In this document: positions 594-63,462 of the stretch, piece after piece
Numbering within the stretch: position 1 is the first letter of the stretch
Layout: each line of letters begins with the position of its first letter
Assembly: GCF_018977255.1 (NCBI RefSeq)
Contig: NW_024704742.1
Coordinates: forward strand, 87,668,001 to 87,732,000
Reading direction: 5' to 3'
DNA length: 64,000 nucleotides
Source: Callorhinchus milii
Lineage: Eukaryota
Position numbers and translations under genes: made by a program
The notes under the pieces: generated by a model
What the model was told of the DNA's origin: nothing
Seen by the model: the letters and a program-made list of their open reading frames with translations, nothing else
Database searches by the model: none

Positions 594-657
594 ATGATTC
601 CTTTGCGATTGGCCACACTGCTGCTATTGGCAGTATGTTTATCCAAGTCAATAGATG
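594..657 (+). CDS. Signal peptide exon ([22 protein letters not shown])
   Basis: ATG at 594, basic residue followed by a hydrophobic core, phase-1 donor G|GTGAGT at 658. A candidate acceptor ttttggcAG at 583 suggests an upstream non-coding exon. Confidence 0.8.
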
Positions 658-3600
658 GTGAGTAAGTGTTGGGTTTAAGATCTGATGTCTAGCTCAGCTG
701 TGAGGGCTGTGCTGGAAACTCCTTTCCTACAGAAAGTAACCCTTGAACGTCTAAATATTTTGTTGCTCACAGGCTCCTGTCTGCTCTCATTCTTGAGAGT
801 AAAACTAGTCCTGATCACTTGACCTGTTCAAGTCTCCACCTTCCTGCTGTGTTGTGGCTTCTTTCCCACCCATTTTAAAATGGTGAGATATTTACATGAT
901 TCTTGGGTTCAGTGGTTGTCGAGCACACGTCCCCATTGTTGTCCATCGCCACCTCGCCTGGGGGGGTGACAAACAACCAGCTGATCCGAAGTACGTTTAA
1001 AAATAGTTTTGTATCTCCAGCAGTGGCTCAATTGTAAGCCCCCTCCCCAGCTGAATCTCCATCAGCCAGGAAGGTACTGGCTTTGATTCCTGTCAGTCAA
1101 TGGTACCTGAGGAAGCTGCAGGGATTGTGCAATTGGCTTTTAAATCCATTGTTGCTGCTATAGCCTGCACTTGTAGTTTTATACTAGTCTTTTGTGCCTT
1201 GCAATGCAAAATCTATTGCAAAAGCCTTTGAAGACCAGATGTGCAGGGATATCTTTCAGTGCATACCTCTTTGAAACACTATGCTGATTTGCAGGCAATA
1301 CACCACTGATTTGCAGCCACAGCAGCTCTTGTGGACCCAATAAAATAGTAGTTTTTGCATTTGATAACAGTTCAGTATCATGATGACTCTTCAACATAAT
1401 GTATGCTTTGTGCTGCTCCAGTTATGTTTGGTAGTCTCTGATCCTCTTTATTGTGTGATTATCATATTTTTCACCCAGAGAGGTGCATTTTTTTTAGATG
1501 GCCTTTAAGTTACCAATTTTCTGATGGGCTTAAAAAACATCTAAGCAAATTCTAATTTTGGCTGAGAGCAGATCTTTCTTCTTAGTATTCTTAGTATTGT
1601 TTTGAAATACAGTAATAATAATAATATTATTAATAATAATAGTGCTGTAAAGCGACTCTATGGACCACTGGCTTTTGTGACAATGAGCCTGATTGGAGTT
1701 CTGATTCTGTTAGGATCCTAGAACATAATCAAGTATGCATTTTTTTTTTAAAAATCTTTTTTTATCCCGAGGTTTACAAATTACGTGTGAGGAATATCAG
1801 TTTCAGTGCAAAAACAGACTCTGCATCCCTTCAGAGTGGAAATGTGATGGAGAAGAAGACTGTACTGATGGAAGTGATGAACATTTCTGTGGTAGGTGAC
1901 TTTAGGGTTAAAGGTGTTCAGACTGACTGGCTGCTTGTATGTTTGAACTCTACATCCATTAACAGTGCTACCAACTACAAACTACTTTTAAATTAGATTG
2001 GATATTCTTCTAATTCAATACAATTTATCAAGCAATCTGGGCTAAAAAGTTGCAATGAACCGTATTTCTATAACCACAACAGAAGATGCTTGTAAATCAA
2101 GCTTATTCTTTGGGGAGGTGCGTGGGCATCTCGTGGAGCTCGACCACTGTTTTTTGCGACAATGAGGTTTGGATTTGTGGAATTAAGACAACTCTTATTG
2201 ACAGAGCTTGAAAGGGCAAGGTTTCTTCCCACTTGCTCTTGTGAACCAACCCTGCAAGCCAAAGTACTAGCAGCTGCAAGTTTGCCAGCCAGCACTCTCA
2301 ATGATGAGTTTGCTGTTTTAGACTATTGAGCTCCAGCAGTACCTCAACCACAATTTTAGGAACCCAAGTCTTGGCTCTCACCAAACTGTATCTAATGCAC
2401 TGGAGAACTGATTAAGTGACGTGTACCTCCAGAGAGTGCATTACTGGTTCCAGATGGAAATTTCCATTTGTAGGTGGCATGCATACGACATTCTGTCTGA
2501 TTTGGTTACTAGTAATGCATTTCTAATTGTGCCAGACACCCAGCTGACCAAAAAAAGGATACTTGCAAAACTAATGAGAAGGCTTTCATAACACAAAGCG
2601 AATTGACAGAAAGTGTGGAAATGTGGATGACAGAAGAGAGTTTCGCTCCCAGGGACTAGGATTGGTTGGGATGAAGTGATGTCCCTGAGTGTTTGCACCA
2701 TAAACACATGATTGAACACAATGAGTGTTGGGATTACATTTATGAAACAGTAGTAAAAATCTGTGCTTTAGAATGGGGGTGGAGGGAGGAAAGAGGAGAG
2801 AGTTGGTATTGTTTAAAAGGTCATTGTAAGAAGGGCAAAGAATTGTTTTGGAAGCACAAAGTATCAAGATGTTGAATCTGTTAGAACAGAAATAGGCCAT
2901 GCAGACAATTAGATTGGCAGTGGAGATGCTATCAATATCTTTATTTCATTATTAAATTAGACCTTTTCAAAAAAATGAAACTATCTTTATTAATGTGGAA
3001 AATAAGTAAATTTTACAGTTTCAATTTTAACTTTTAAAATCGTAATGTGGAACCTCTTTAAAACTAGGATTAGTTGGGGGGGGAAGAGGGGAGAAGCAGA
3101 GGGGCGAATTAGAGGAAAGAAAACAGCTGAGACTAGTTGTCAAACGAGCGGAAGCAACAGATCTCAACCTTACATGGTGAATTTGTCTTTTCCAGCCCAG
3201 TCCACTTGCAGTTCTCTAGAATTCACATGCTCCAGTGGCCGATGTGTTTCTCAGACTTTTGTGTGCAATGGGGAAGATGACTGTGGTGATGGAAGTGATG
3301 AACAAGGGTGTCGTACACCTATCTGTGGGCCACATGAGTTTCAGTGCAAGAACTCTGAGTGTATCCCACTGACCTGGGTGTGTGACAACAATGCTGACTG
3401 CACTGATCGATCTGATGAATCTCGAGACAGCTGTGGCCATACCCTTCCTCCTCCTGTGACCTGTTCTCCGAGTGAAATGCCATGTGATTCAGGAGAATGT
3501 ATCCACCGCCTATGGTACTGCGATGGTGGGATTGACTGCAAAGATGGAAGTGATGAAGCTAATTGTTGTAAGTCGAAAGATCTATAAGCTTTAGGTCTCT

Positions 3601-6600
3601 ACAGGTAAGAAGGGGCACATGACGACAGCTTTGCATAAGAACATAAGAAATAGGAGCAGGAGTAGGCAATTCGGTCCCTCGAGCCTGCCCCGCCATTTAA
3701 TAAGATCATGGCTGATCTTCTAACCTAATTCCATTTACCCACCCTATCCCCATATCCCTTTAAGGGGTTGTTTGTGGGTCTCCTAATTATCACAAGCCAG
3801 TTCTTTCTGCTCTGATTCCATGCTGTTTGATGGGGTTGTTGTGCCAACAATCTGGTGAAAATCTTTCTGAGGAACTATTTGAAGGCTCTAGAACCTCATT
3901 TCATATCTTAGATCTTCATGGGAGTGAGTGGCTTTTACTCAGTAAAATACTGTAATTTGTTTCTGTCTTTAGGACAATCGCTATAGCATCAGATGTTTTC
4001 TGCAAGCGAGGTAACTTCTGGGGATTGCATTATACATTGGGGATTTTGAGCCTTTCTTTGTTGAAACATGGAGGGAATGGTTGTCGTTCAAAAAGAATGG
4101 GGCAAATTGTGAACATTGCTAACCTTTCGCAGCTCTTGTGACTCGTTCTATATAGTCAAGTCTTAACATTCAAATCGTTTGCATGCTAAATATTAATGTG
4201 AGAAGATTTCCTGCAACATTTCACTTCCATTTTTCTATCAGCTGCTCAAACGTGTAGACCAGATCAGTTCAGATGTGGTGATGGCAGCTGCATCCCTGAA
4301 AGCTGGGAATGTAACAAAATGATGAACTGCATTGATGGCAGCGATGAGGTCAACTGCACAAAAGGTAGGTGTCCAATCTGAATTATAGGCTTCAAAAGTT
4401 CAATAAATGTTCTCTCCTGAAACGTTTATCATTCTTTCCTCCAGAAGTTCCAACATGCACAGGGCCTACTGATTTCAAGTGCCAAAGCGGAGAATGCATA
4501 CAAATACACCAAGTGTGTAACCGCTATCTGGACTGCAAGGACTGGAGTGATGAACCCTTCAAAAGTTGCCGTAAGTGTCTTGGGAGTGCTACGGATGTGC
4601 ATCTAGTTTAAAATGTCAGCATCTGTTTTACAAGCATTTGTTTCTGACTAAGCCAATCAGTTTGATTATCAGTGCCTGAGATTCCATACAAAGGTGCTTT
4701 TCCTGAGTATCTATTGGGGTTTTGTGCACTGTTCCAATGTAACTCATGTAAAATGCCTGGATTGCCTTAACTGCTGATAATTACAGTCAGTGCAAGGTTC
4801 TCTTCCCAAGGGAACCTGTATTGAATGACCTTTGTGGGATTTGTCATAAACAGTGCAATGTGCATTTTAATCTTCCAAAACTGAAAACGATGTCTTGTGT
4901 TTCCTCTAAATTCCAGGAAGATTTGGAGTTTTTTTTGGGGGGGTGGGGGAAAGGGAAGAGAGGAATCCTTAAGGATTCCGATATGGTCTACTTCCAGAGC
5001 AGCCTTCTCATGGGTCCGTTTACCATGAGTTTCAGTGTGCATTAGACTCAAATACGTGCACTAGTCAGTGCACAGTTTCCACAAGCATTAACCTTTTGCT
5101 GTAATTCAATTCTAGAACTCGTTTGGGCTTTCATTCCCTTTCCTTGTGCCCCCCTTCACCGGGTGTAAAACCAGTTGTTTGAGTAAAGAGGGAGTATTAA
5201 TTTGACCAAAGTGCTGCTTGGGTCATGTGGTAGGTATATGATGGGTCAAGCAGTGATCAGCTTTATTCTTCCTTGATCCTTTTAATCTGCAGATGTGAAC
5301 GAATGCTTGGACAACAATGGTGGCTGCTCTCACCTGTGCAAGGATCTTCCCATTGGGTATGAATGTCATTGTCCTGATGGCTTTGAGTTGATTGACCAGA
5401 AAACATGTGGAGGCAAGTCAACTAACCCTTTGTTGTTGTTGTTAACTAATGGTACAAACTTACTTCTTTTCATGACGATAATGTTATAAACTTGCTCCTT
5501 TCATGAACCTCTTCCATTATAGATGTCGATGAGTGTCAGAAGCCTGGAACTTGCGGTCAAATTTGCATCAATCTGAAAGGAAGCTATAAATGTGAATGTC
5601 ATACAGGCTATCACATTGATCCAACCACTGGAGTTTGCAAGGGAATAGGCAAGTAGAAAGTTAAGGAAAGTCCAAGTTCTCCCTGCCAGGATATTAGTGG
5701 GTAATCTGTTGTTTTTAAGGTAAGGAATGGAAACCTCTCTAGCCTTCTCCTCTTCCCCAAAGAAAATGTACTTCTGTGCCTGAAAACCGTGCAGTAATTA
5801 ATCTTAGCATTCTTCTCTTCTCTCCCCCGAAATACTCTTCACTGTCTGCCCCATACCCAATGGTTCTCCCACTGATGGTGGGGGCGTGAAACAGTCTGCA
5901 GTCTTGTTCCCACCCCAGCTGTAGTTTCTATTTAAATCCTCAACTCCAAATGCTACAAAATATTCAAACCATACCCTTTCTGTATCTCCAATCCTTTAAT
6001 ACCATGGTACTTGCAGCTTTTGTCTTTTGATCTTCAATCCTTCTACCATGTAGATTTCCTTCTACCACATAAGATTTCAACACTGTCATCCTCTTTCTTG
6101 TCCAACTCCCTCATAGAATTGTATTTGACATGTAGTGTCCCAAACAAATATGTAGGACGGTGGAAGATGAACTGAATGGATCTTGATCTTTTGCCTAGCA
6201 AATTCTTATGTTATGTATTTCTCCATTCAAAGTTTGACTTCCTGTTGTATTACTCTACTAGGAACAGAGCCTTATCTATTCTTTACTGATCACCACGATA
6301 TCAGGAAACTAGGACTTCACAGCAAGGAGTACACAAAGGTAGCTCTGGAACTGAGAAATGTGATATCGCTAGACACTGATATTGCTGCACAAAGAATCTT
6401 CTGGGGTGATTTGGGACAGAAGACAATTTTCAGGTAATGCAAACACTGTGGATTTAAGAATTACTATAAACTGTAACGCAGAGATAATTTATAAACCTGT
6501 TAACCTTCTCAGGTGCAGTAGTTGATACAGGTAGATACTGGCCAACACTCACCAGTTAGTTCTTGTATTACCCTAACCTAATTATCTGCCTATCTGCTGT

Positions 6601-9600
6601 TGGACCGACTTATCTTAATTTTTGGATGCACTGTCAACTGCTTCCCTGACCTGTTTTTCAAATATTGGCAAATCTAATTTGGAACCTGTCTTGTGACAGA
6701 CGTCAAGATCCCTCATAAAATTTGTTAGCTATTTTCTTTCTAGAGAATAGTTAATGGAAGGTTAACTGAATGGACCCGAGCTCCTGTGGATCCAGTAGAA
6801 AGGCTTCCTCCAGCTCATGTGCAAAGTCCAGGATCAAGCAGTGAGGTGGATTTGTGGCAAACACGGGAATCATTTGCAAGGAGGAAGGGTGGGCTCTGTT
6901 CTATACAGACCCTGGAGGCTGTTGACTTTCCAGTGGGCACAACTGCTTGCCAAGGCTCCTCACAGTATTGCAGGTGCCTGGCTCATCAGCAAGACCTGGA
7001 AGGGCAGACCAGTCACTGGTGACAGGGACTCTTCCCACTCAGCTCCAATTAACCCCTGCAAGCCAAAGCCCTAAGACGAAGGGTGGTTCTAGCTAGCAAG
7101 AAGCAGACAAGCTTGCAGTGCTATCAATGGCATACTATGGGGTTTTAGCTGATTGTACCCAATGCACACTTTGAGGTCTCCAAATCTTGGCTCTTGCCAG
7201 AATGTGCCTAATGCTTTCTGGAATTAGGTAAGTTGAATTAGGTAAGGAGGGAGAGAGAGCGTATTCCCTTCCAAAAGTCTATCTCTGGAATTTCTATGTG
7301 GAGGTGGGATGCTTGGAGCTCCATTTAGTTTGGATATTCATAAGCACGGTGATTGGTTTCCACATGACACCTGGCTGACCCCAAAACAATCTTTCTAGAG
7401 AAGATATGGCATAATTATGTGTCCTCATCTTAGAAAGAGGTTACTATCTGATAATGGCATGGTCATATGTAACTCATTTCAACAAACTGATCAAATACGG
7501 TTCTGTTGTAGCAAATGCACAAATAGCTTTGCCATTAACTTTGGTTGACTCCATCTTTTCATTGAAGTCTGAGACTCCTAATTTAATGTGAACATCTCAA
7601 TCTTTAAGTATGTCCATAGATAAACAAGAAGACAATCCCAGTGTATTCCAAGTTCTTAAGGGTTCCCATATTCCTGTGGGCATTGCTGTGGATTGGATCT
7701 ACAAGCACATCTACTGGACTGATGCCAGCAATAAAACCATATCCGTGGCTACCTTTGATGGAATCAAAATGAAGATTCTCTTTGACACTGACCTCAGGGA
7801 GCCATCTTCTGTGGCAGTTGATCCACTATCCGGGTACTGATGGTTTATATCAAATTATGTATCCACAACCTGTCTTTCAACATATATGATGGTCTCTATA
7901 TTAGAGGCAATTAAGCACCTTGGGCAGCCAGGTGGCTAATTGAGAGCAAGTCTAGTATACAGTCACAAAAGCTTTTATACTAGTTCTCCTTTCTTGCCAT
8001 ATTTTGTTCATACTGTTTATCTCATCTTTTCTTCCACCACAAAAATACCAAAGTGGAGAGGAAAATGTGCCGCATTCATTACTTCATTATATAAGACAAT
8101 GAATTGGTGGCTCTAGAAAGGCCCACACTTTTATATTGTTATAGTTCTATATTGGCTAGGTATACACTATAGGCTGTACATACACTGTACTGGTTGCTCT
8201 GCCTGTATATACACTGTGTGCACAAGGGAATAACTAGATAAAGATGTAATAAGTAAATGTGCAGTTGCTGAACAAATTTCCCAAAGTTTTATTGCTGCAA
8301 GTGATTGGTGCATTGTTCTCTTNAAAAAAAACTAAGTGGCTAGTTAAATTAATGGCTAATCTCATGTGGAATGGTCCATTCCACCTAAATCTAGGGCTCT
8401 TTTTGATGTAAGCTCATCTGTGTATACCACTGAACTGTAGTCCAGGCAGTCATTGGCTTCCTCTATATATAATGGAAGGTGCTTAAGCATCCTTTATTCG
8501 TCTTGCTACTAGTTGTGGGGAATTTGGGTTTATTTTAATGTATACATCAATGTATCCTAAAATTAAGTCTGTGTGCCCCATGATGTTTGTCAGTTTAGAT
8601 GTGGGGAAGGAAAACACCTGGAGTTTGTGCTAATTCACTGATATACTTTTATGTCGAAGGTTCATTTACTGGTCAGACTGGGGTGAACCAGCAGTAATAG
8701 AAAAAGCAGGGATGAACGGTGTTGATCGTCAGCTCCTGGTTACCCAAGATATTCAGTGGCCAAATGGCATTGCACTAGGTGAGCAGAGTGCTAAAGGTCC
8801 ATTTTTTTCCCAACATTTGGATTGTCAAGTTGTTTCTTTAAGTGATTGCTCCCTTGTCTACAGACCTTGTGAATAGCCACCTTTATTGGGTTGATTCAAA
8901 GGTACACAGCCTGTCATGTGTAAGCTTAAATGGCCAGGATAGAAGAACCGTGCTACAGTCTCAGGAATTCCTTGCTCATCCTTTCAATCTCGCAATATTT
9001 GAGGTAAGGTTCATGTCCTTCAGGTGTGAATGTATGTAACTTTGAATTGAAGTAATATTCCTGGTGAGTGTTGGATGAGCAGAATACTTATTCCTTTGCA
9101 CTGGTCTCTGGTCAACTTTAAAAGATAGTGGACCATTTATGTTCATTACAGAAATTTGTCCATCAATACTTCAATATATTGAGTAGATCACAGCATGCTA
9201 GAAAGCCACCCGATGCTCCTTCAAGCCTCTGGTTGTCTATGTGTCCAAGTTGTTAATGTTTAAAGTATATTGGTTGTATGGTGAAGGAAAACCCAAATCA
9301 CTCCCTGTATAATGAAGGAAGTGGTCTGATATCTTAATAGCCATGAGAAGAGTAGAACTGTGTGGATCTGAAGCATGAGACACCATTACCCATACTTTAC
9401 AGATGAATTTGGAACTAAACATGTAGATATAAAAGCAGCAACGTGAAACGCGACTACAAATGTAATCTTGTTTTTTGTTGTTGTTGTCATAGAGGGGTTT
9501 AATGGACCATAATATACACTACTTCAAATGCAATACTTCCTGGCAGTCTATAGAGCTGATATACCACTTCAATCAAAGAAGGAATGTTAGTGGGTGTTAG

Positions 9601-54600: not shown

Positions 54601-57600
54601 TTGATTTTCCAGGTGTCGGTGGTGTTACCTCTTGTAAAGGACAGTCATTTCTACAAAGATTTCTTGCTCTTATCCTGTTTCTCCTCCTCACCAACGTGAA
54701 ACCAGTGTTTATTTGACTTCAGTTGAGTTGCAATGTAGGCAATAGTTTAGCCCCAAACTGTTTTGTGGCACCTGAACAAATTAGAATTTGGATTAAAATA
54801 AGGTACCATTATAATGTAAAATCTGATGGGAACCAGTTTTAAAACTATGGGATTTTAATCACACAGTATCACATTTTCTCTCAGCTTTTTATTCTGGGAA
54901 ACTCTTTCCCCTGATTACATTTTCTCCTTGTGCCTACCTCTCAAGATCAAAAGTAGAAAATACTTGCTTGCAATTCACTTTAAGACTAAAATGAGATTCC
55001 AACAGCAACTTCTTTCAAGTATGTTTTTGGAGCTCTCTAAGCATTTATGTGCCAGACATTTGTTTGAACGTTGGCCCGTATAAGTTGCATTTCCATAACC
55101 GGTGCATCCCACCCTCACAAACTCCAAATCCTTCAGACTTGCCACTGTAATAGCTGTTGTCAAAAGCTGGTTCCCTTTTTGTGTAAATCAAAACTCCTCA
55201 TTACCCAAGAATATACTTTAGCATAAATGTCAGAGGATCCTGTTTTAGTATATTCTTTTTTAAACAGGTGAAAACTGGTGCAATAAGCACTTTATGAATG
55301 GAGGCTGTGAATACCTCTGTCTCCCTGCTCCTCAAGTACATGGTTATTCTCCAAAATACACCTGTGTGTGTCCACCTGGAATGGAACTAGAACACGATGA
55401 AAAACATTGTAAAGCAGGTAAATGTGAAGCAGTTGTTTCCACACTCACACTTGTATAGGTGGCCACTTCCATGTGCATAATTCACAAGATGTGCAACTGC
55501 AAAGCAGAGTCGTCAAGGGCAGGAAGCTGAGCAGCTGCTTGGGCTCTTGGTCAAGAAAGCAGTCATTCCAATGAAATACCATTGGTCCTCATCTGAAGCC
55601 AGCCTGTTAAAGTTTGAAATGTGCACTGTAATTGATCGAAAGGTTACAAGGCTTGTAATGCACACATTTAGGCTAGAGTATAGTAGATCAGGAATTACTT
55701 CATAATTTGTTTCTGTGTAACTTCCCAGTTAAGACTAAGTCATCTATCTGGTAAATCTTTGAAATAAACTATTCTGAGATTTGATTGAATTTGTCAGCAT
55801 GTCCGGGGAAGGACCTTTAACAAGAGTTTTTTAATGGAACTTTCCAAGTGTCCACTTCAATACTTGATATTTAAATAATCCTTTTTAAAAAAAATTGGGT
55901 GACTCAATCCACGACTGTTTGTAGGCGATTGGCTGCCGCATTTCGCCCACAAATATACAGTCTTTACAGTATATCTGAAGTGCTTTGAAACTTCTTGAAG
56001 ACATGATGAGGCACTATGTCAAATGCAAGGATTATTATTACTGTTCTCAAATCTGGGTGCACTATAACTCTGCATTAGGAACAGTCTGCTCTGTCCCAGT
56101 TGTGGCTGGTGTTGGAACATTGTAAACCCAGATTCTAGTTTTGAGGAAAGAAAACGGTAAGATCTCAGCTCAGGAGTTTATGTTTATGATGTTCTTATTG
56201 GGTTTCCTATTCCAGCAGCAGTGTATTTCATAAACACGGCCATTATTTTGTTGTGCAGTCAATTGTCTTAAGGCAATTTGGAATGTTCGTTTTACAGACT
56301 TGTGTCTTATTTCATTTAGTTAAATCTACCTGCACAATATCAGACTTCATGTGCCACAATGGCCAATGTGTGCCTGATAGGTGGCAGTGTGATGGGAATA
56401 CTGACTGTGCTGATGGATCTGATGAAAGTCCAGAAATCTGCCGTAAGTTCTATTTTGAACTATTCCCGCCTTATGAGAACGATTTGAGAGAGAGAGAGAG
56501 AGATAAACTTCTTCGTTCTATTTAGTCGTCAACCTGTTTAGTGTTTTTACCAGAGGTTATGCACTGCTCTGCAGTGGTTGTCTAACCCTCTGCTTTGCAC
56601 TTCAAGGCTTTACCCAGCGTGAAGAGTGCTATATAAATGTTTGTTATGACAATACTCTATGAAATGCAAACGTTACAGTACATTATAATACCTGCATTTG
56701 AACCTGCAAATAACAGTTGATGGAGATGCATCTTGTATTTTAGATAGGTCTAAGGCATCTTTGGTTTCAGCAAACCAACTTATCCAAACTTTTAATGATT
56801 AAGGTGTAAACTTATGACTTCTTCAAACTAAATTGGCTTAGTTTTTATCTTTTCAATCATTCCCAAAGCTATTAAACATGTAGCTAATGTTCTTGTGCCT
56901 GATCTTTGAATGCCCCTTATGACTTTTATTGTTGTGGTTTCAATTGCACACCTGCTATTAACTCAGTTAAGTACTGAATGGTAGCAGTAGTATATCTGGC
57001 ATGTTGATGGATAGTGAGGGTAAATGTTTATCAACCCCAAACTCTAATAGATGAGATAATTCTAGCTGCCAAATATTGTGGTGATCTACGAATGTAGTTT
57101 TGGTTGGAGTTTCAGCTATTGCCTAGTGGTGCAGAATGTATATATCAGATACTCCTGAGAACCATAATTGGCTGATGTGAAGTGTTGTCTAATACCAAGG
57201 CTGTGAATAATTGAGATCTTGCATTTGCTGTGTGATTCAAGCTGTTTTGTGTTGATTTCATGCTTAGAATGGCATCCCAGTTTGAACAAATACTTATCTA
57301 AACTCCAAATGTGCATGTTTTAATGACTGTTAACAAGGCATAGCTTATATTTTTTTAAAAAGTTGGTTGTTCGCTATTTACAACAACTTTGCTGTTTCCT
57401 TCCTGAATTGATGCAGCACTAACTGGAACCTGGATATAATTCTCTTTCAGATATGAAGAAGTGTCCCATAAATGAGATCAGCTGTGGTCCTGGATCATTG
57501 CAGTGTATCCCAGTTGCTTGGAAATGTAATGGGGAGATAGACTGTGAAACAGGTAGTGACGAGAGAGACTGTGGTACGTTAAGAAACTATTTTCTCTGCC

Positions 57601-60600
57601 CCAGGATAAAGCCCTTCATTCTCCTCCTCTTTCCCTCTGCTCCCCCGCCCACTATGAGCGTGTGTAAATGTCAGCTTATCTAATTGTTTGGGAAAGAGGG
57701 AGAATTTTGCATTTCATTAAGAAACATTACAGACCAGGGATTTGCTAGTTCAAATCCCTGACGGCTCAGTCAGCTGGAGCTGTATGGGGGAACCTAAACC
57801 CCTATAGGTTTCCAGATGTGGCAGTCAAGCTCAACTGGGACACCTACAGTGAAGTGGCCTCCAATACTCGCTGCCCAGGTTCACAAATGAATGGGTATCT
57901 TGGTAGGGTACTGGAGGGGAACTATACCCCAGCATGAGGAGGCTGGAGCAAAATCAATCAAAGAGAAAATTGGACATCAAAATTTAGAACAATTACTTAT
58001 GTTCAGCGTTACACAAAATTAGAGTAATGCACCAGAATAGCCTCCTCATGCAAAATATCAGTAGACATTTATAATTAAATTGTCTATAGTGCATCTGGTT
58101 CTCAAAAGCAGAAGCGCAGGTAGACATTGCTATTTAAAACCTTCCAGGTTTACATCCAGGGATAATAAGGAATAAACCAATATCTTGCAATTTTGGAATC
58201 CTTATTTTTTGGCTCTGTTGAACACTGCATGTAGTTTTGTAGGAAGTACACAAGTGTTCAGTGGAAAGAAGACACTGATGTGGGTTATAATTAAGATGAA
58301 ACAGAAGGTTAAAGGGGGAGGATTCCAAATTACGGATTCTTTGGTAAATCAGTAGCAAGAGAACATACTCTTCTGTGGTGCATTTATTACAGCTGGGTGG
58401 CTTGCTTGATCAACCTCAAAGGGCAGAATGCAAGTGGCAAGGATGGCACATTTCCTTCCCTGAAGGGCATTAGAAAACCAATGGGGTTTGCAATCTGGCA
58501 GACTAGTATTTTTCTGTTGCTGACTCAAATTACCAACCTCCCAACAGCACAGCTGAGATCAAGAACTTGTGAATAGGGACTTTTCTTCATGTGTTTTGAA
58601 TTGTATCCCAAAGCCTTTTGCAAGTGCAACTTATCTACACTTATATAGAGTTAACTATAATGAGTTCCTGTGAATCAGTTGGACTTGCTTCTGGTAAGGC
58701 GCATGACTAATTAACAAATCTTGTGATGTATTGCAAATTAATTTAAATCCTATTTGTTTAAAGGCACTGTCTTAATTTCCTTTTACAAAAAGTTCTTTTT
58801 TTCTTCACTTCCTGTTAGGTCGCTTTACTTGCAGTCCAGTAGAGTTCACGTGCTCCAGTGGTCGATGTGTTTCCAAGACCTTCGTCTGCAATGGGGAGGA
58901 CGACTGTGGTGATGAAAGTGATGAACAAGGCTGTGCTGATTCTCAGTGTGGCCCGCATGAATTTCAGTGCAGCACTTCTGAGTGTATCCCTGTGAACTGG
59001 GTGTGTGACAACAATGTTGACTGTACTGATCAGTCTGACGAATCTCCAGGGCACTGTGGATACACACTCCCCCCTCCTGTGTTATGTTCTTCAAATCAAA
59101 TGCAGTGTGATTCTGGTGAATGTATCCACCGCCAATGGTACTGTGATGGTGACACCGATTGCAAGGATGGAACTGACGAAATTGACTGCCGTAAGTAATT
59201 TGTTTTTTCAATCCTATGCTCCTAATATTTCCAGAAGTGCTCTGTTCACTCCCTGCTCTGATAGCTGTGGTTCACCGCTGCTCAAGTTCACCCAGATTCT
59301 TCTTGATGGGAAGCTTCTGTTCAATGAGCATGAAAATATTTTGTATAGAGCCTTGTATGTTGCAAAGTATCATGTGCTAACAGCTATGAGGTGAATTACT
59401 AATCTGAATTTTCATTAGGAGCAGAGATTCTTCTCATTCAACTACTCTTAATCCTGCAAATCAAATTCATGATGGTAGTGTAATCCTAGCAGCAGGAAAC
59501 AGTGTTTGAGATGGCAAATTATTGCAGTTTTAACTCATTAAGCTACATCAGAACCCCAATGCACCCTCTGGGGTGTCTAAGCGTTGCCTTTTGCCAACTT
59601 GTGCTTAAAATACTCCAAACCTGAGCAAGCCGTAAGTGTCTCTGGGGAGAGTTCCCGTGCAACTTTACCTTTTCAATGACATGGATCAAGAAGGCACAAT
59701 GTCAGTTTAACATCTCATCTAAAGGACTGCACCTCTGATTACTCAGCACTCTCCATCTACAGCATGCTACAACAAGGATAGTAAGCCTTTGACTGTCAGA
59801 ATTCCAGAGTCTCTTAAGCTAGATGGTGCTTGATGCTTGTGATCTGCAGAGGCATTGTGGAGTCCTGTAGCTCAGTGGTTAGAGCACTCGCCTTGCAAGA
59901 GAGACACCTGGGTTCAATTCCAGGCCGGGCGAAACCTTGGGCAAGTTTCCTTACTCCACACGCCTAATAATAATCCTTCCAAAACAAAACAACAATAATA
60001 AAAAAAAATTGGTCATTTTCAATCCACGACTGTTTGTGGGACACTGCTGTATGCAATTGGCTGCTGCATTTTGCCCACAAATATTCGGTCAATTCACTTC
60101 ACAGTCTATTCTGTAAAGCACTTTGAGACATCTAGAAGACGTGAAAAGCGCTATATCAAATGCAAGGATTATTATTATCTTCCCTTGTTTAGTACTTCTC
60201 TCACCAATGCTTAGTAACAGTCTAATGGACAAATGTACAAGTGGTAAATTTGGATCATACTTAAATGTGACCATTCCAATTGCAGAAATATTAACTCTGT
60301 ATGCTGCAATACTTCTGTATGATAATGGTTTAATTGGCTGGCTGTTTATAGCAAAATTTCCAAGTACATATCTTAAATTGTTCTGTAATCTTCAATGCCT
60401 ATGCTCTCATGATTTCAGCTCCTCGAACATGTAGACCTGATCAATTCAGGTGTAATGATGGCAGCTGTATTGTTGGAAGTGACCAATGCAATGGAATTGG
60501 GGATTGTACGGATGGGAGTGATGAAGTCGACTGTGTGAAAGGTAAGTTTGTAACTGCATTGCAAGTGACCAGCTCATGAATTGATTTATAATCTGACCCC

Positions 60601-62615
60601 ATTTCTAACTGAATTTAATGTCTGATTTTAGCTCAAGTGTGCAGACCTGATCAATTCAGGTGTGGTGATGGTATTTGCATTGTTGGAAACATGCAATGCA
60701 ATGGAATTGGGGATTGTACAGATGGGAGTGACGAAGTCAACTGTGGACAGAGTAAGTATACAATTGCATTGCTTTAGTGACTAATCTTGTGGTTGTTTCC
60801 ATAGCATAAAGAAACTTTTTTTTCCTTTCAGTTGTTGCAAAGTGCACAGGACCTGCTAACTTCAAGTGTCTGAGTGGAGAATGTATAAATATGACACAAG
60901 TATGCAACCAACACCAGGACTGCAAGGATTGGAGTGATGAGCTACTCAAGAAATGTTGTAAGTGATTTGGAAGGTTCCAAAAGAACAAATGAACTTGATT
61001 TGTGTACAATCTTATTTCCTTCCCCTACTTTTTAAACTGAACATTTACTGATGTACAACAACAAATTACATTTGTATCGCACCTTTCATGTCGGGAGGAC
61101 ACCCCAAGGCGCTGGACAGTTAGGGATATGGACCCGAGCAGGGGTTTGCGATCAGGAGGGGTGGGAGGCAGGGAGGGCAGGAGTAGGAGGGTGACCAAAG
61201 ACGCGGTCGAAGAAGAGTTTTGAGATGTGCCTTGAAAAGGGAGGGAGCGAGGCGAAGGGACTGTTGGATTCTTTGACCAATTCATTGATTCGCTTGCTTT
61301 ATCCTTTCTGTAGACGTCAACGAGTGCTTGGACAACAATGGTGGCTGCTCTGACATCTGCAGGGACCTGGTCATTGGTTATGAATGTGAATGCCCTTCTG
61401 GCTTTGAATTGGTTGAAACCAAAATGTGTGAAGGCAAGTTAACTGATCCTGTTTCTTATACAGTAGTGTAAAGAAAACGGGTAATTTGTACACTGAAGAA
61501 ATATTGTAACTTTTCTATGCAGATATTGATGAATGCCAAACCCCTGAAATTTGCAGTCAAATCTGCACCAACCGAAAAGGAAGCTATATATGTGAATGTC
61601 ATGCAGGATATCACATGGATCAAGTTGATGGGGTTTGTAAGACAGTAGGTAAGTAAAGCTGATGGGTGTTGGACAACTATCTTGCATAGTTCACGACTGA
61701 CTTTTCCATCATTTTTATGATTGGTTGATTTGAGGTTGGAATCTAGCATTAATCAATGCGACTTCTACACTCCCTTCAACTTCAGCTAAAAATTGGTCAT
61801 CCAAGCTCCCTTAGTGACATCAGAAATATATATATACATCTTATAGTGCTTTGGGACATCCTAACATGAAAGGCGCTACACAAATACAACTTGTTGTTGT
61901 TATACAAATGTACAAAGCCAGCTAATAGAGCCTCCTATAACTTTAGTGGGACGCATCTGGTTTGACATGATGAACCCTCTGCCTCCATGCAATTTAATAA
62001 ATCCTAAAAGGCCCACCCCTCCTATTCCCTTTTCTTTTAAATACATTGTTTTTTTTCTTCAACCATAGCTTTCACATTCTCATTCCTTTCAAATTTTCCT
62101 TCTAAACTACCTTTAAGACCTACTAGCCATATCAGATTTATGCATTTTATTCTGAATACTTGTCAATTTCAGGCACTTGTTAAATGACTTGTGTTTTCAA
62201 ATTTTGAACTGCTAGAGGCAAAACATCAGATCTTTTAAAAGTAGATTCAGCTTTTATAGGTCAAACTAAAATGTACTGATTAAGTACAATAAATCAAGAA
62301 TTTAACTATTAATTCTCAATTAGGGATATATATGTAAATTGCTAGTTGCATAATCCTTGCATTTGGTGTATTTTCATGTAATTGGAATGTCTGAAATTAC
62401 TTTACAGGGTTTACTGTGCAGTGAGTAGTGACAACTTGCATCAATCTTTCATGTAGGATAACGACCTATACCTTTGTACACAACAGCCAATTTGTGCACA
62501 GCGATGTTCCACAAACAGCCATGAAGGGAGTCAATGTCCAGATTTTTGTATCTGGAGATTATTGGCCAGCACACCTGTCTATACATGCTTCTCCTCTGTA
62601 TTATATTTTATATAT

Positions 62616-62647
<32 letters not shown>

Positions 62648-63462
62648 GCAATCCTTAGTTGTTAGAGTACTCACCTCTCAAATGAGAAACCTGGGTTTGC
62701 CTGGCAGGCGAAATGTTGGGCAAGTTTTCTTACTCCACACGCCTCTGTTTACCTGGCAATAAGGAACCCGGTTATTAGTTGATTGGTGGATTGCTTTTCC
62801 GGTGGTAATAATTCCTTCAAAAAAATAATAATAAATTGGTCACTCATCAACAACTGTTTGTGAGACAATGCTGTGCATAACTGGCTGCCACGTTTCACCC
62901 ACAAAATATACAGAAAATTCACTTTAAGATCTATTCTGTGAAGCACTTTGAGATGTCTTGAAGACATGAGGTGCTATATCAAATGCAGGGATTATTATCA
63001 TCTTGCATTCTGCATGCTTTCAGCTTGCTTGATCATTTTACGAGATCAATTATCCTACCATCTTTGCACATCTGATTCCTTATTTGGAACCCAAAGGGGC
63101 AATATGGAAACTCGGATGGCGTGGCTGTAATTTGATTGCCTGACCATTTTGATAAATAATAATTGATAGTCAAGATCTTTTGAAAACACACCTTGAAATT
63201 AAATCATTCCATGACCGAAAAAAAATCTCTTCAATATGACTGCTTCTTAAATCAAGAGTGGTTTCTTAATCTGTAAATTGTATTGTATAGGAAAAGAGCC
63301 CTTTTTGATCTTCACGAATCGCCATGATATCAGGAAACTGGGACTCCACCACAAAGAGTACACCCAGGTAGCTGTGCAGCTGAGAAATGTAGTGGCATTA
63401 GATGCTGACATTGCTGACCAGAGGATCTTCTGGGCTGACTTGGGAGAGCAGGCAATTTTCAG
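594..63462 (+). CDS. VLDLR: VLDLR-like receptor gene with tandemly multiplied ectodomain (spliced; 71 exons traced; 3' end beyond window)
   Basis: Exon peptides match VLDLR ([43 protein letters not shown], [23 protein letters not shown]). Propeller exons of 172/119/140/142 bp are the LDLR-family sizes. Splice phases are compatible from exon to exon. Probably a lineage-specific paralog rather than the canonical ortholog. Confidence 0.85.
1772..10598 (+). CDS. VLDLR: Module 1: 6 LDLa + EGF-A/B + YWTD propeller + EGF-C (12 exons, 1935 nt)
   Basis: Exons 1772-1891, 3196-3567, 4242-4364, 4445-4570, 5293-5412, 5523-5648, 6262-6433, 7609-7833, 8660-8778, 8864-9003, 9631-9772, 10449-10598. All open and in phase. 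GC donors at 5413 and 5649. Confidence 0.9.
2130..2500. repeat. Unclassified interspersed repeat fragment (related copies ~6770-7330, ~12750-13110, ~18630-19830)
   Basis: Shared motifs ccctgcaagccaaag and tcttggctct..cc...tgt..ctaatgc occur at two different intronic sites in each duplicate. Confidence 0.5.
3636..3760 (-). mobile_element. CR1-type LINE 3' end fragment (copy at ~14912-15038)
   Basis: cataagaacataagaaataggagcaggagtaggc...aataagatcatggctgatc is a typical reverse CR1 terminus with a short tandem tail. Confidence 0.7.
11953..11989 (+). pseudogene. Destroyed duplicate of the signal-peptide exon
   Basis: Acceptor CAG is CAT here. ATG ATT CCT TTG CGA T is fused directly to the sequence matching position 1357 (about 747 bp deleted, including the donor), which gives MIPLRCI*. 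Confidence 0.85.
12384..22950 (+). CDS. VLDLR: Module 2: near-identical copy of module 1 with a 1-bp frameshift in the second propeller exon
   Basis: Exons 12384-12503, 14474-14845, 15521-15643, 15724-15849, 17115-17234, 17345-17470, 18083-18254, 20114-20337 (224 nt vs 225), 21162-21280, 21366-21505, 22473-22614, 22801-22950. Confidence 0.75.
13550..14210 (-). mobile_element. 5'-truncated L2-type LINE, present only in module 2
   Basis: Minus-strand ORF with RNLGVLFD...[14 protein letters not shown]...[15 protein letters not shown], a (CAA)n tail, and a ctttac direct repeat at 13544-13549 and 14211-14216. The empty site is near 2940. Confidence 0.9.
16688..17068 (-). mobile_element. tRNA-derived SINE
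   Basis: Reverse complement of the head gtggagtcctgtagctca..ggttagagcactcgc, with an (ATT)n tail. Confidence 0.85.
22057..22330 (+). mobile_element. L2 3' fragment
   Basis: [15 protein letters not shown]...[10 protein letters not shown] and the tail gtgaaaggcgctgtacaaatgtaat-(TTG)n. Module 1 keeps only the tail (~9438-9487). Confidence 0.8.
23394..23484 (+). pseudogene. Possible decayed LDLa exon
   Basis: After ttccAG, the stretch aaatgt-tttaagtactgccatggaaacagtgacgag-aactgg resembles aaatgtgatgagtttaaggactgcaatgatggcagtgacgaggtcaactgc of exon 26381-26503. It contains stop codons. Confidence 0.45.
24769..34941 (+). CDS. VLDLR: Module 3: 6 LDLa + EGF-A/B + propeller + EGF-C (12 exons, 1923 nt)
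   Basis: Exons 24769-24891, 25423-25791, 26381-26503, 26580-26702, 28482-28601, 29153-29278, 30249-30420, 30946-31170, 31622-31740, 31829-31962, 32413-32554, 34795-34941. All AG/GT bounded and in frame. Confidence 0.9.
28672..29140 (+). mobile_element. L2 3' fragment
   Basis: [31 protein letters not shown] motif. The 3' part is nearly identical to the element at 13550-14210. Confidence 0.9.
29553..29915 (-). mobile_element. Degenerate CR1 fragment
   Basis: tcatagaattatacagcacagga terminus, and ccttcctaaagtgtggtgcccagaactgaacacaatactc (reverse of [10 protein letters not shown]). Confidence 0.7.
33365..34700 (+). mobile_element. CR1 LINE ORF2 (reverse transcriptase) fragment, frameshifted
   Basis: [49 protein letters not shown] and [13 protein letters not shown] across ORFs 33457-34485. 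Confidence 0.95.
35343..46235 (+). CDS. VLDLR: Module 4: 7 LDLa + EGF-A/B + propeller + EGF-C (13 exons, 2043 nt)
   Basis: Exons 35343-35465, 36593-36715, 37792-38163, 41636-41758, 41840-41962, 42060-42179, 42257-42382, 42751-42922, 43209-43421, 43777-43895, 43972-44111, 45143-45284, 46089-46235. GC donor at 41759. Confidence 0.9.
36051..36383 (+). mobile_element. Full-length tRNA-derived SINE with L2-like tail
   Basis: A box tagctcagtgg, B box gagttcaattcc, tail gtgaaaagcgctatatcaaatgcaagg-(ATT)n. Confidence 0.9.
37110..37330 (-). mobile_element. SINE 3' fragment
   Basis: ataataatccttgcattt...gcagccaattgcgcacagca; same family as 36051. Confidence 0.75.
39133..41580 (-). mobile_element. Degenerate L2 LINE (endonuclease + RT fragments)
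   Basis: Minus-strand peptides LQNVCSL..ILGLTET (APE-like endonuclease), [27 protein letters not shown] and YADDTQL. Multiple frameshifts. Confidence 0.9.
46801..55417 (+). CDS. VLDLR: Module 5: 6 LDLa + EGF-A/B + propeller + EGF-C (12 exons, 1929 nt)
   Basis: Exons 46801-46923, 47418-47786, 48054-48176, 48310-48429, 48965-49084, 49160-49285, 51655-51826, 52272-52493, 53090-53211, 53288-53427, 53821-53962, 55268-55417. GC donor at 51827. Confidence 0.9.
48192..48267 (+). pseudogene. Decayed duplicate LDLa exon inside a 133-bp intron
   Basis: gatggcactgtatt...tgcaatgagatt...attgacggcagaggaggtcaactgt parallels the adjacent exon 48054-48176 (DG.C...CNE...DGSDEVNC). It has indels and no splice sites. 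Confidence 0.65.
49692..49937. repeat. ~53-bp inverted repeat pair with ~140-bp spacer
   Basis: 49692-49744 (actactgttatatgaaaggcgctatacaaatgtaatatgttgttgtgtcgcaa) matches the reverse complement of 49885-49937 with about 4 mismatches. Confidence 0.85.
50063..50557 (-). other. Intronic antisense 164-codon ORF with ~4 hydrophobic segments, origin unknown
   Basis: Long open frame in AT-rich DNA with a TTG start. An ATG AAT GAC ACG lies just upstream in another frame. Confidence 0.35.
51154..51475 (-). mobile_element. Full-length tRNA-derived SINE
   Basis: Reverse complement of the 36051-36383 family. Confidence 0.9.
55905..56040 (+). mobile_element. SINE 3' fragment
   Basis: caatccacgactgtttgt...aaatgcaaggattattatta. 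Confidence 0.75.
56320..63462 (+). CDS. VLDLR: Module 6 (partial): 8 LDLa + EGF-A/B + first propeller exon
   Basis: Exons 56320-56442, 57451-57573, 58819-59190, 60419-60541, 60632-60751, 60832-60957, 61314-61433, 61523-61648, 63291-63462. GC donor at 61434. Continues past the window end. Confidence 0.9.
59857..60178 (+). mobile_element. Full-length tRNA-derived SINE
   Basis: Same head, A/B boxes and tail as 36051-36383. Confidence 0.9.
61055..61265 (-). mobile_element. L2 3' fragment
   Basis: (CAA)n-attacatttgta tail and similarity to 13550-13770. Confidence 0.75.
62650..62999 (+). mobile_element. Diverged SINE, preceded by a (GT)n(AT)n microsatellite at 62617-62647
   Basis: gttagagtactcacc...gggcaagtttt...aaatgcagggattattat. 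Confidence 0.75.

What the first reader, a model, noticed from the sequence alone, without database searches (positions are those of the whole stretch)
594..63462. Giant 'poly-VLDLR': one signal peptide followed by at least six whole VLDLR ectodomains in series
Seen: six cassettes of LDLa(6,6,6,7,6,8)-EGF-EGF-propeller-EGF. Every EGF-C exon ends in a phase-1 donor and the next cassette opens with a phase-1 LDLa acceptor. I found no O-linked, TM or NPxY exon between cassettes. Two of the gaps are only 401 bp (34942-35342) and 565 bp (46236-46800), too short for a gene end plus a new promoter. Known: canonical VLDLR has one such cassette and acts as the vitellogenin receptor in egg-laying vertebrates, while LRP1/LRP2 are large through a different, ancient arrangement. 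Inference: an LRP-sized (>3,700 aa, 39+ LDLa), independently evolved multivalent lipoprotein or yolk receptor. Duplicated VLDLR genes may already be described in cartilaginous fishes, so novelty needs a literature check.
Basis: partly seen in the sequence, partly recalled or inferred. Interest (0 to 1): 0.92.

Follow-up and report, generated by a model that had tools for sequence, protein, structure and literature searches.

The report
Multi-unit VLDLR yolk-receptor gene, already described
This is a real, expressed gene that strings many whole copies of the VLDL (yolk) receptor's outer part into one giant receptor, but such multi-unit receptors of sharks and their kin were already described in 2023, so this is a further, larger member and not a new kind.

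Summary
The + strand carries 71 exons forming VLDLR-type cassettes with 6, 6, 6, 7, 6 and 8 LDLa modules. Five cassettes are whole. The sixth is cut by the window end after its first propeller exon. All five cassette junctions are phase 1 to phase 1. I found one signal-peptide exon (594-657) and no TM or NPxY exon. Spliced contigs from 4 of 4 runs (two studies) join EGF-C of cassette 4 to the first LDLa exon of cassette 5 (46235|46801), so at least these two cassettes share one transcript.

The kind is known. Ohishi et al. 2023 (PMC10015161) named chondrichthyan VLDLRc2 (three units) and VLDLRc3 (five units), ovary-expressed in catshark. Database proteins of sharks and rays end in a TM helix and a FENPxF tail.

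Caveats:
- Cassette 2 is a roughly 99% copy of cassette 1. It keeps a truncated first exon and has a 1-bp deletion in one propeller exon that breaks a continuous >3,700-codon frame.
- Only one of the five junctions was tested with RNA.
- The tail lies outside the window.

What is new is modest. There are at least six units, against five and three in print. The module make-up matches neither c2 nor shark c3. One unit duplication is very recent.

The parts
594..657 (+). First coding exon: signal peptide (21 codons + 1 base), phase-1 GT donor
   Evidence: Sequence read. It is the only hit upstream of cassette 1 in the signal-exon scan. The M-I-P-x-R start resembles the N-termini of VLDLRc2/c3 proteins printed.
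1772..10598 (+). Cassette 1: 6 LDLa (LA1 type, then LA4-8 types), EGF-A, EGF-B, five propeller exons, EGF-C; 12 exons
11377..11981 (+). Copy of the gene's upstream region (88% identical to 1-609). It ends in a remnant of the signal-peptide exon (first 16 bases from the ATG, about 11966-11981), cut off by a 746-bp deletion relative to 610-1355
12384..22950 (+). Cassette 2: recent duplicate of cassette 1. Exons differ at 14 of 1935 positions and introns are about 97-99% identical
20114..20337 (+). Cassette 2, second propeller exon: 224 nt instead of 225. It lacks the base matching T7636 (near 20140), which shifts the frame and gives a stop 54 codons into the exon
24769..34941 (+). Cassette 3: 6 LDLa (LA3-8 types), EGF-A, EGF-B, propeller, EGF-C; 12 exons
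34942..35342 (+). 401-bp intron between cassettes 3 and 4. It has no polyA-signal hexamer and no signal-exon candidate. Read-through would stop after 2 codons
35343..46235 (+). Cassette 4: 7 LDLa (LA2-8 types), EGF-A, EGF-B, propeller, EGF-C; 13 exons. The last four exons are confirmed by spliced contigs
46236..46800 (+). 565-bp intron between cassettes 4 and 5, removed in RNA (GT..AG) in 4 of 4 runs
   Evidence: joint 46234>46800, cut +1. Single contigs run from propeller exon 43777-43895 through EGF-C into 46801 onwards
46801..55417 (+). Cassette 5: 6 LDLa (LA3-8 types), EGF-A, EGF-B, propeller, EGF-C; 12 exons. The first six exons are confirmed by spliced contigs
56320..63462 (+). Cassette 6, incomplete in the window: 8 LDLa (LA2-8 types with the LA7 type doubled), EGF-A, EGF-B, first propeller exon; 9 exons

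Best explanation
The window holds the 5' two thirds or more of one gene for a multi-unit VLDLR. It belongs to the chondrichthyan VLDLRc2/VLDLRc3 kind. It is the second such gene of this animal, and I call it c3 by exclusion.

Shown: one signal peptide is followed by whole VLDLR ectodomain units, each an LDLa cluster, EGF-A, EGF-B, a YWTD propeller and EGF-C. Every unit begins and ends in intron phase 1, so units splice head to tail in frame, and a unit can be added or skipped without breaking the frame.

Inferred from full-length relatives and from established knowledge of the LDLR family: the protein ends downstream of the window in a Ser/Thr-rich stalk, one TM helix and a short FENPxF endocytosis tail. 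It acts on oocytes as a multivalent endocytic receptor for vitellogenin or lipoprotein. The LDLa clusters bind ligand and the propellers release it in acidic endosomes.

Cassette 2 is a very recent tandem copy of the gene's start (upstream region, first exon and cassette 1). It became an internal unit, and its own first exon is now truncated. Whether it is translated is open because of a 1-bp deletion.
For: - Exon series, phases and open frames.
- All 39 of 39 LDLa modules keep six Cys.
- No TM or tail exon in the window. No convincing second signal exon.
- RNA: the joint 46235|46801 appears in 4 of 4 runs from two studies. The eight other predicted junctions in 43700-49350 are seen in 3 or 4 of the 4 runs, all GT..AG. 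Single contigs cover four cassette-4 exons plus the first cassette-5 exon.
- Relatives: 5-unit proteins of Scyliorhinus torazame ('very low density lipoprotein receptor c3', 3423 aa), Rhincodon (3489 aa) and Mustelus (3484 aa). 3-unit c2 proteins include a Callorhinchus milii protein (XP_007890808.1, 2164 aa). All end in TM + FENPxF.
- That C. milii protein has the conserved c2 module pattern 8-6-7, which the window lacks, so the window is the other multi-unit gene.
- Among single-propeller receptors in the PDB, VLDLR scores best: 284 bits against 184 for LDLR and 93 for LRP8 on the triple-LDLa exon, and 90 against 82 for LRP8 and 57-64 for LDLR on a propeller exon.
- Literature: units, ovary expression and the multivalent-binding idea.
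Against: - Only one of the five inter-cassette junctions was tested with RNA. The runs are kept as contigs, which cannot show transcript ends or one molecule spanning all units.
- Cassette 2 carries a frameshift, so in this assembly the frame from the signal peptide closes inside cassette 2 unless that cassette (or that exon) is skipped or the base is an assembly error.
- The TM helix and tail were not seen, because they lie outside the window.
- No protein encoded by this window was returned in three length bands: 1178-3794, 1919-6105 and 68-215 aa.
- The unit make-up matches neither shark c3 nor c2. Single-exon trees give no one-to-one unit orthology, so 'c3' rests on exclusion.
- The tissue of the expressing runs is not known to me.
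Confidence: 0.85

Rival explanations
1. The functional receptor has the five old units only (cassettes 1, 3, 4, 5, 6, and perhaps more downstream). Cassette 2 would be a dead or skipped recent copy, or a false duplication in the assembly, so the protein would be of the shark five-unit size.
For: - Cassette 2 has a 1-bp deletion that gives a stop within its second propeller exon.
- Joining cassette 1 directly to cassette 3 keeps frame, and 59 of 59 exons are then open.
- The two copies are 99.3% identical in exons, as a very young or artefactual copy would be.
- Five units is the number in shark c3.
Against: - The rest of cassette 2 is intact. All splice sites are kept, and the exons after the shift are open when entered in the right phase.
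- The copies differ by five large indels (348-736 gap columns each), and the upstream part is only 88% identical. That is more than I would expect (my assumption, untested) for two haplotypes laid side by side, and no N run marks the junction.
- Skipping the 224-nt exon alone, or using a cryptic acceptor just behind the deletion (20134, 20137, 20146), would also restore frame.
Confidence: 0.4
2. A tandem array of separate VLDLR-like genes or gene pieces, each cassette being its own gene (soluble receptors) or a pseudogene, rather than one gene.
For: - Read-through of each EGF-C donor meets a stop within 2-45 codons.
- AATAAA or ATTAAA hexamers follow within 320-1260 bp.
- Contigs lie in part of the 4>5 intron (46346-46534) in 3 of 4 runs.
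- Cassette 2 still has a copy of the upstream region.
Against: - The 4>5 junction is spliced in 4 of 4 runs, with contigs spanning both cassettes.
- Cassettes 2-6 open with phase-1 acceptors and have no signal exon of their own. The only other signal exon is truncated.
- The gaps of 401 and 565 bp leave no room for a gene end plus a promoter.
- Relatives in 10 or more species are single multi-unit proteins.
Confidence: 0.04
3. An expressed but decaying pseudogene: the frameshift in cassette 2 ends translation early and the downstream cassettes are no longer under selection.
For: Frameshift. No window-encoded protein in the database searches.
Against: - It is the single defect in 71 exons. All 39 of 39 LDLa modules keep their six Cys, and 37 of 39 keep the acidic cluster.
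- Cassettes that differ by 21-37% in protein still keep every exon, phase and splice site.
- Spliced RNA of cassettes 4-5 is present in runs from two studies.
Confidence: 0.08

Closest known systems
VLDLRc3 of sharks (Scyliorhinus torazame 3423 aa; Rhincodon 3489 aa; Mustelus 3484 aa), Ohishi et al. 2023
   Same: - One signal peptide followed by whole VLDLR ectodomain units in series.
- Internal units never start with LA1.
- 63-74% identity on single exons.
- More than three units.
   Different: - Sharks have five units with the pattern [LA3-8][LA2-8]x4.
- The window has at least six units, with the pattern [LA1,LA4-8]x2 [LA3-8][LA2-8][LA3-8][LA2-8 with one module doubled].
- No one-to-one unit orthology is resolved.
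- The tail was not seen here.
VLDLRc2 (three units), including Callorhinchus milii XP_007890808.1 (2164 aa)
   Same: - Same kind of unit.
- The closest single protein on several exons (78-83% on three exons).
- Its units 1-2 group with the window's cassettes in the triple-LDLa exon tree (83/84 support).
   Different: - The c2 pattern 8-6-7 is conserved from rays to C. milii and is absent from the window.
- The signal peptide differs.
- The window has twice as many units.
Canonical VLDLR / LR8 (vitellogenin receptor of egg-laying vertebrates)
   Same: - Each cassette is a VLDLR ectodomain.
- 57-69% identity to gar VLDLR on two single exons; 66-69% when identities are summed over the cassette's exons.
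- Best PDB match among single-propeller receptors.
   Different: Canonical VLDLR has one ectodomain with eight LDLa, followed at once by the stalk, TM helix and NPxY tail.
LRP1 / LRP2 (megalin)
   Same: Similar overall size and many LDLa modules. NCBI's automatic names for the shark relatives say 'LRP1-like' or 'LRP2-like'.
   Different: - Much lower similarity (at most about 57% on short stretches).
- Their LDLa clusters are separated by runs of several propellers and are not whole repeated VLDLR units (established knowledge, recalled).
Teleost Lrp13 and insect vitellogenin receptors
   Same: Ovary-expressed LDLR-family yolk receptors with more ligand-binding modules than VLDLR.
   Different: - Lrp13 has 7-13 N-terminal LDLa plus one C-terminal LDLa (passages of PMC9935665), not repeated whole ectodomains.
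- Insect VgR has two units (recalled, not checked here).

Membership tests
Chondrichthyan multi-unit VLDLR (VLDLRc2/c3, Ohishi et al. 2023) | Several whole VLDLR extracellular units in series in one polypeptide | tested here: met
   Five of 5 junctions are phase 1 to phase 1. The junction 46235|46801 is spliced in 4 of 4 runs. The other four junctions rest on sequence only.
Chondrichthyan multi-unit VLDLR (VLDLRc2/c3, Ohishi et al. 2023) | Units closest to VLDLR among LDLR-family members | tested here: met
   the family and gar VLDLR score at or above 96 and 165 bits on two exons, against at most 70 and 110 for all others. VLDLR scores above LDLR and LRP8 in the PDB. No whole-unit tree with LDLR and LRP8 was made.
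Chondrichthyan multi-unit VLDLR (VLDLRc2/c3, Ohishi et al. 2023) | One C-terminal stalk, TM helix and FENPxF tail after the last unit | not testable with these tools
   No such exon in the window.
Chondrichthyan multi-unit VLDLR (VLDLRc2/c3, Ohishi et al. 2023) | Ovary-restricted expression | tested here: inconclusive
   Five runs guessed to be RNA hold 0.05-0.22 of the words. Four other such runs of the same species label hold next to none. Tissues are not given.
VLDLRc3 in the strict (shark) sense | Five units with LDLa pattern 6-7-7-7-7 | tested here: not met
   The window has 6-6-6-7-6-8 and at least six units. The 'c3' label rests on exclusion, because the same species' 3-unit protein has the c2 pattern.
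VLDLRc2 | Three units with LDLa pattern 8-6-7 | tested here: not met
   5 of 5 c2 proteins show 8-6-7. The window does not.
Canonical VLDLR (LR8) | A single ectodomain followed by the stalk, TM helix and NPxY tail | tested here: not met
   EGF-C exons are followed by further LDLa exons, not by stalk or TM exons.
LRP1 / LRP2 | Sequence affinity to LRP1/LRP2 modules | tested here: not met
   LRP1 and LRP2 proteins score about 60-66 bits (propeller exon) and about 100-105 bits (triple-LDLa exon). VLDLR-type proteins score 92-130 and 165-203.
Teleost Lrp13 | N-terminal LDLa cluster plus a single extra C-terminal LDLa | tested here: not met
   The architecture in the window consists of repeated whole units. 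The Lrp13 architecture is taken from passages of PMC9935665. No Lrp13 sequence was compared.

The most novel reading that the evidence does not exclude
This animal's second multi-unit VLDLR gene has grown beyond the five units in print and is still growing. A very recent tandem copy of upstream region + first exon + unit 1 was absorbed as an internal unit, made possible by phase-1 symmetry and a first exon that has no acceptor. All six or more units would then be translated into one receptor of more than 4,000 aa, the largest of its kind. Unit number would be a labile trait: 3 in a skate protein, 5 in sharks, at least 6 here. The units of the two genes in this species may also be homogenised.
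Probability: 0.3. Interest if true: 0.5.

Novelty: new member of a known kind. Interest (0 to 1): 0.3.

Why it matters
This is a clean natural case of a receptor lengthened by adding whole ectodomains. Symmetric intron phases make that possible, and here a young duplicate still shows how a unit is added. For reproductive biology it gives a chimaera counterpart to the shark VLDLRc2/c3 genes, which are thought to load very yolky eggs. It also shows that unit number and module make-up differ between lineages. It is not a new kind of receptor, because the concept, the names, the ovary expression and the multivalency idea are in print.

Tried and rejected
- The search of protein representatives with one propeller exon was dominated by multi-propeller LRPs, as I had feared. 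Its top hits still led to the shark and ray multi-unit proteins.
- The search for homologous proteins with a ray c2 protein, a shark c3 protein and the cassette-1 triple-LDLa exon returned no protein encoded by this window. The third search was meant to catch transcript-derived fragments across the 1>2 junction. It gave only 64-68% relatives.
- Naming ten representatives gave no vertebrate LDLR or LRP8, so those were compared through the PDB only.
- Exon-wise identity sums against 36 reference units were flat at 61-79% and gave no unit orthology.
- I rejected the idea that cassettes 3-4 and 5-6 are a duplicated two-unit block, because identities among the old cassettes are flat at 63-79%.
- Single-exon trees resolve elasmobranch units by position but not the window's. 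The AU tests used groups named after the tree was seen. Test A (window + all c3-type units as one clade, p 0.005) is uninformative, because the shark c3 units are not one clade in that tree anyway. Test B (all nine rows of this species as one clade) is not rejected (p 0.20). Test C (the six window cassettes alone as one clade) is borderline (p 0.04).
- Tandem Repeats Finder found nothing at score 100 or more. The G-rich 38.2-41.6 kb intron is probably an antisense LINE remnant.
- The search of earlier findings by words gave nothing on this gene family.
- The supplements of PMC10015161 (fig. They may show this gene and its species repertoire.
- I did not build, search or fold a joined spliced model, so a whole-unit phylogeny of the window's cassettes was left out.
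Full report
**Observation**

The window is eukaryotic DNA of about 40% G+C with two single N. A six-Cys LDLa pattern with an acidic cluster occurs 30 times on the + strand and never on the - strand. tblastn with the thirteen exon peptides of the first cassette finds the same series again and again: LDLa exons, EGF-A, EGF-B, five propeller exons and EGF-C.

With splice sites and phases this gives 71 exons:
- the signal-peptide exon, 594-657
- cassette 1, 1772-10598
- cassette 2, 12384-22950
- cassette 3, 24769-34941
- cassette 4, 35343-46235
- cassette 5, 46801-55417
- cassette 6, 56320-63462

Cassette 6 stops after its first propeller exon because the window ends. LDLa counts are 6, 6, 6, 7, 6 and 8. 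All 39 modules keep six Cys, and 37 of 39 keep a D-x-SDE-type cluster. All five EGF-C donors and all five following acceptors are phase 1. The modelled exons sum to about 11,230 nt, or about 3,740 codons (plus 9 nt for the better GC donor at 41758).

**One gene or several: sequence evidence**

- A scan for ATG + hydrophobic core + phase-1 donor recovers the exon at 594-657 as the only hit upstream of cassette 1. In the five gaps it gives 0 to 2 weak hits each, four in all, and none looks like a signal peptide of this family.
- The O-linked/TM/tail parts of seven related receptors find nothing in the window (best E 0.26).
- The 3>4 and 4>5 gaps are 401 and 565 bp.
- Read-through of each EGF-C donor would stop after 2 to 45 codons, and AATAAA or ATTAAA hexamers follow at 320-1260 bp. 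Sequence alone therefore cannot exclude short soluble forms.

**One gene or several: RNA evidence**

The look-up of sequencing runs on 41600-49300 listed four runs that hold about 0.2 of the words (X1, X2 and X4 from one study, X3 from another). Four further runs hold about 0.9 and are presumably DNA.

I laid X1-X4, which are kept as Logan contigs, on 43700-49350. The joint 46234>46800 (GT..AG, cut +1, that is 46235|46801, skipping 565) is present in 4 of 4 runs. Single contigs (803 nt in X1, 648 nt in X3) run through propeller exons 43777-43895, 43972-44111 and 45143-45284, then EGF-C 46089-46235, and on for 97 letters into cassette 5.

The eight other junctions I had predicted in that stretch were all seen, each GT..AG, in 3 or 4 of the 4 runs. 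One further joint (45354>45398, AT..TC, X1 only) lies in a very deeply covered intronic repeat, and I set it aside. The spliced contigs also show that these runs are RNA, which their records do not state.

One loose end in X3 (before 43776) carries the 3' end of the cassette-1/2 type of the second propeller exon. The first 21 bases of the next exon are identical in cassettes 1, 2 and 4. This is therefore a cross-mapped piece of a cassette-1 or cassette-2 transcript, which shows that the 5' cassettes are also transcribed.

**What it is**

A propeller-exon search of the 1.84-billion-protein library put three cartilaginous-fish proteins with 47-48% identity over several stretches among the first eleven hits, the first two of them on top. 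Their names are 'LRP1-like' or 'hypothetical'.

Searches from these gave a family found only in sharks, rays and a chimaera:
- 'very low density lipoprotein receptor c3' of Scyliorhinus torazame (3423 aa), with Rhincodon (3489 aa) and Mustelus (3484 aa) counterparts
- 'very low density lipoprotein receptor c2' (2165 aa), with counterparts in rays, in a bamboo shark and in Callorhinchus milii (XP_007890808.1, 2164 aa)

A crude motif map shows five and three LDLa-plus-propeller units respectively. Each protein ends in one TM helix and a FENPxF tail.

Window exons are 78-83% identical to the C. milii c2 protein, 61-77% to the elasmobranch proteins and 57-69% to gar VLDLR. Everything else in the local set of 381 proteins (LRP1, LRP2, LRP4 and invertebrate receptors) reaches at most about 58%, with roughly 60-70% of the bit score. 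Among single-propeller receptors in the PDB, VLDLR scores best on both a triple-LDLa exon and a propeller exon.

Earlier notes of this scan name the genome as elephant shark. I did not verify that beyond the closeness to the C. milii paralogue.

**Literature**

The full-text search for 'VLDLRc3' and 'VLDLRc2' finds one paper: Ohishi et al., Genome Biol Evol 2023, PMC10015161. I read passages of it and sections 8 and 9 in full.

The paper states that:
- chondrichthyans have three tandem VLDLR genes
- c2 and c3 are expressed only in the ovary of the cloudy catshark
- C. milii is in their synteny figure and their repertoire survey

The unit structure is given for the catshark only. The supplements, which may show the C. 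milii genes, could not be opened. A search for VLDLR + Callorhinchus milii + vitellogenin found that paper and one eel paper. Passages of the eel paper describe teleost Lrp13 as having 7-13 N-terminal LDLa plus one C-terminal LDLa, which is a different build. The kind is thus in print. I found nothing in print on a six-unit member (searches).

**How this member differs**

- All five c2 proteins, the C. milii one included, are [LA1-8][LA3-8][LA2-8].
- Of the three shark c3 proteins, Rhincodon and Mustelus read [LA3-8][LA2-8]x4. The S. torazame sequence lacks its N-terminus, and its first unit shows only five modules.
- A skate protein with a c3-like tail has three units.
- The window reads [LA1,LA4-8] twice, then [LA3-8], [LA2-8], [LA3-8], and [LA2-8 with one module doubled].

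The window therefore matches neither pattern. Because the same species already has a c2-pattern gene, I call the window's gene c3 by exclusion only.

Exon-wise identities to 36 reference units are flat at 61-79%, and so are those among the old cassettes at 63-79%. In a tree of the triple-LDLa exon (123 columns), elasmobranch units group by position across species. The window's six cassettes group with units 1-2 of the C. milii c2 protein (support 83/84) and not with any one shark unit. Trees of two propeller exons are poorly resolved but give no contrary signal. Holding all nine rows of this species together is not rejected (p-AU 0.20). The groups were named after the tree was seen. This fits either concerted evolution or lineage-specific unit gains, and I cannot tell which. 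A whole-unit tree was left out because it needs joined exon models.

**The young unit**

Cassettes 1 and 2 differ at 14 of 1935 exon positions. Their introns are mostly about 99% identical, apart from five large indels.

The copy includes the upstream region (1-609 against 11377-11981, 88% identical) and the start of the first exon. In copy 2 the first exon stops 16 bases after the ATG, where a 746-bp stretch (610-1355) is missing. A first exon has no acceptor, so transcripts from the upstream promoter would splice EGF-C of cassette 1 (phase 1) straight to the first LDLa exon of cassette 2 (phase 1).

Copy 2 also lacks one base in its second propeller exon (the T at 7636 in copy 1). This shifts the frame and gives a stop 54 codons into that exon. 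It is the only defect among the 71 exons. The later exons of cassette 2 are open when entered in the proper phase, and leaving cassette 2 out gives 59 of 59 open exons.

Several possibilities stay open: the base may be an assembly error, the cassette or the exon may be skipped, a cryptic acceptor (20134, 20137 or 20146) may be used, or the long frame may truly be broken.

**Mechanism, with what is shown and what is inferred**

Shown:
- the exon architecture and the phase symmetry
- intact ligand-binding modules
- splicing of cassette 4 to cassette 5
- membership of the VLDLR branch

Inferred from relatives: the stalk, TM helix and FENPxF tail lie downstream, and expression is in the ovary.

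Inferred from established LDLR-family knowledge (recalled): calcium-dependent ligand binding by the LDLa clusters, acid-triggered release by the EGF-propeller region, and clathrin uptake through the NPxY-type motif. In sum, this would be a multivalent endocytic yolk or lipoprotein receptor.

**Verdict**

The feature is real and the reading is right in kind. As a kind it is already known. As a locus it is a new and larger member with a different unit make-up and a very recent unit gain. Interest is modest.

Noticed in passing
window donors at 5412, 5648, 17234, 17470, 41758, 51826, 61433: Seven of the 71 modelled donors are GC (all GCAAGT) where the sister cassettes have GT at the same place. 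This is about ten times the share usual for vertebrate introns (that share is recalled). None lay in the RNA-tested stretch.
   Followed up: partly
window 46346-46534 (intron between cassettes 4 and 5): Contigs of 3 of 4 RNA runs lie here (depth 3-5 against 10-21 on exons), just before AATAAA at 46554. Read-through of the EGF-C donor gives 41 codons and a stop at 46358. This could be intronic polyadenylation giving a soluble four-unit form, or just unspliced RNA.
   Followed up: no
window 33457-33930 (+) and 38200-41640 (about 40825-41262 on the - strand): LINE remains in introns: a reverse-transcriptase ORF (RVT_1, E 9.6e-26), and a weak endonuclease-like ORF on the minus strand inside a G-rich (GC skew up to 0.44) 3.5-kb intron of cassette 4.
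   Followed up: partly
window 45212-45778: Intronic stretch with very high summed contig depth (up to about 50,000) and many loose ends in all four RNA runs. It is probably a highly expressed or highly repeated element.
   Followed up: no
window 60419-60541 and 60632-60751: Two neighbouring LDLa exons of cassette 6 are 77% identical in protein. This single-module duplication gives the cassette its eight modules.
   Followed up: partly
window 47529-47575: Five A>G or T>C differences on one contig in each of 3 of the 4 RNA runs, within the triple-LDLa exon of cassette 5. A second contig matching the window is also present in at least two of these runs. This may be an allele or a cross-mapped sister cassette.
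   Followed up: no
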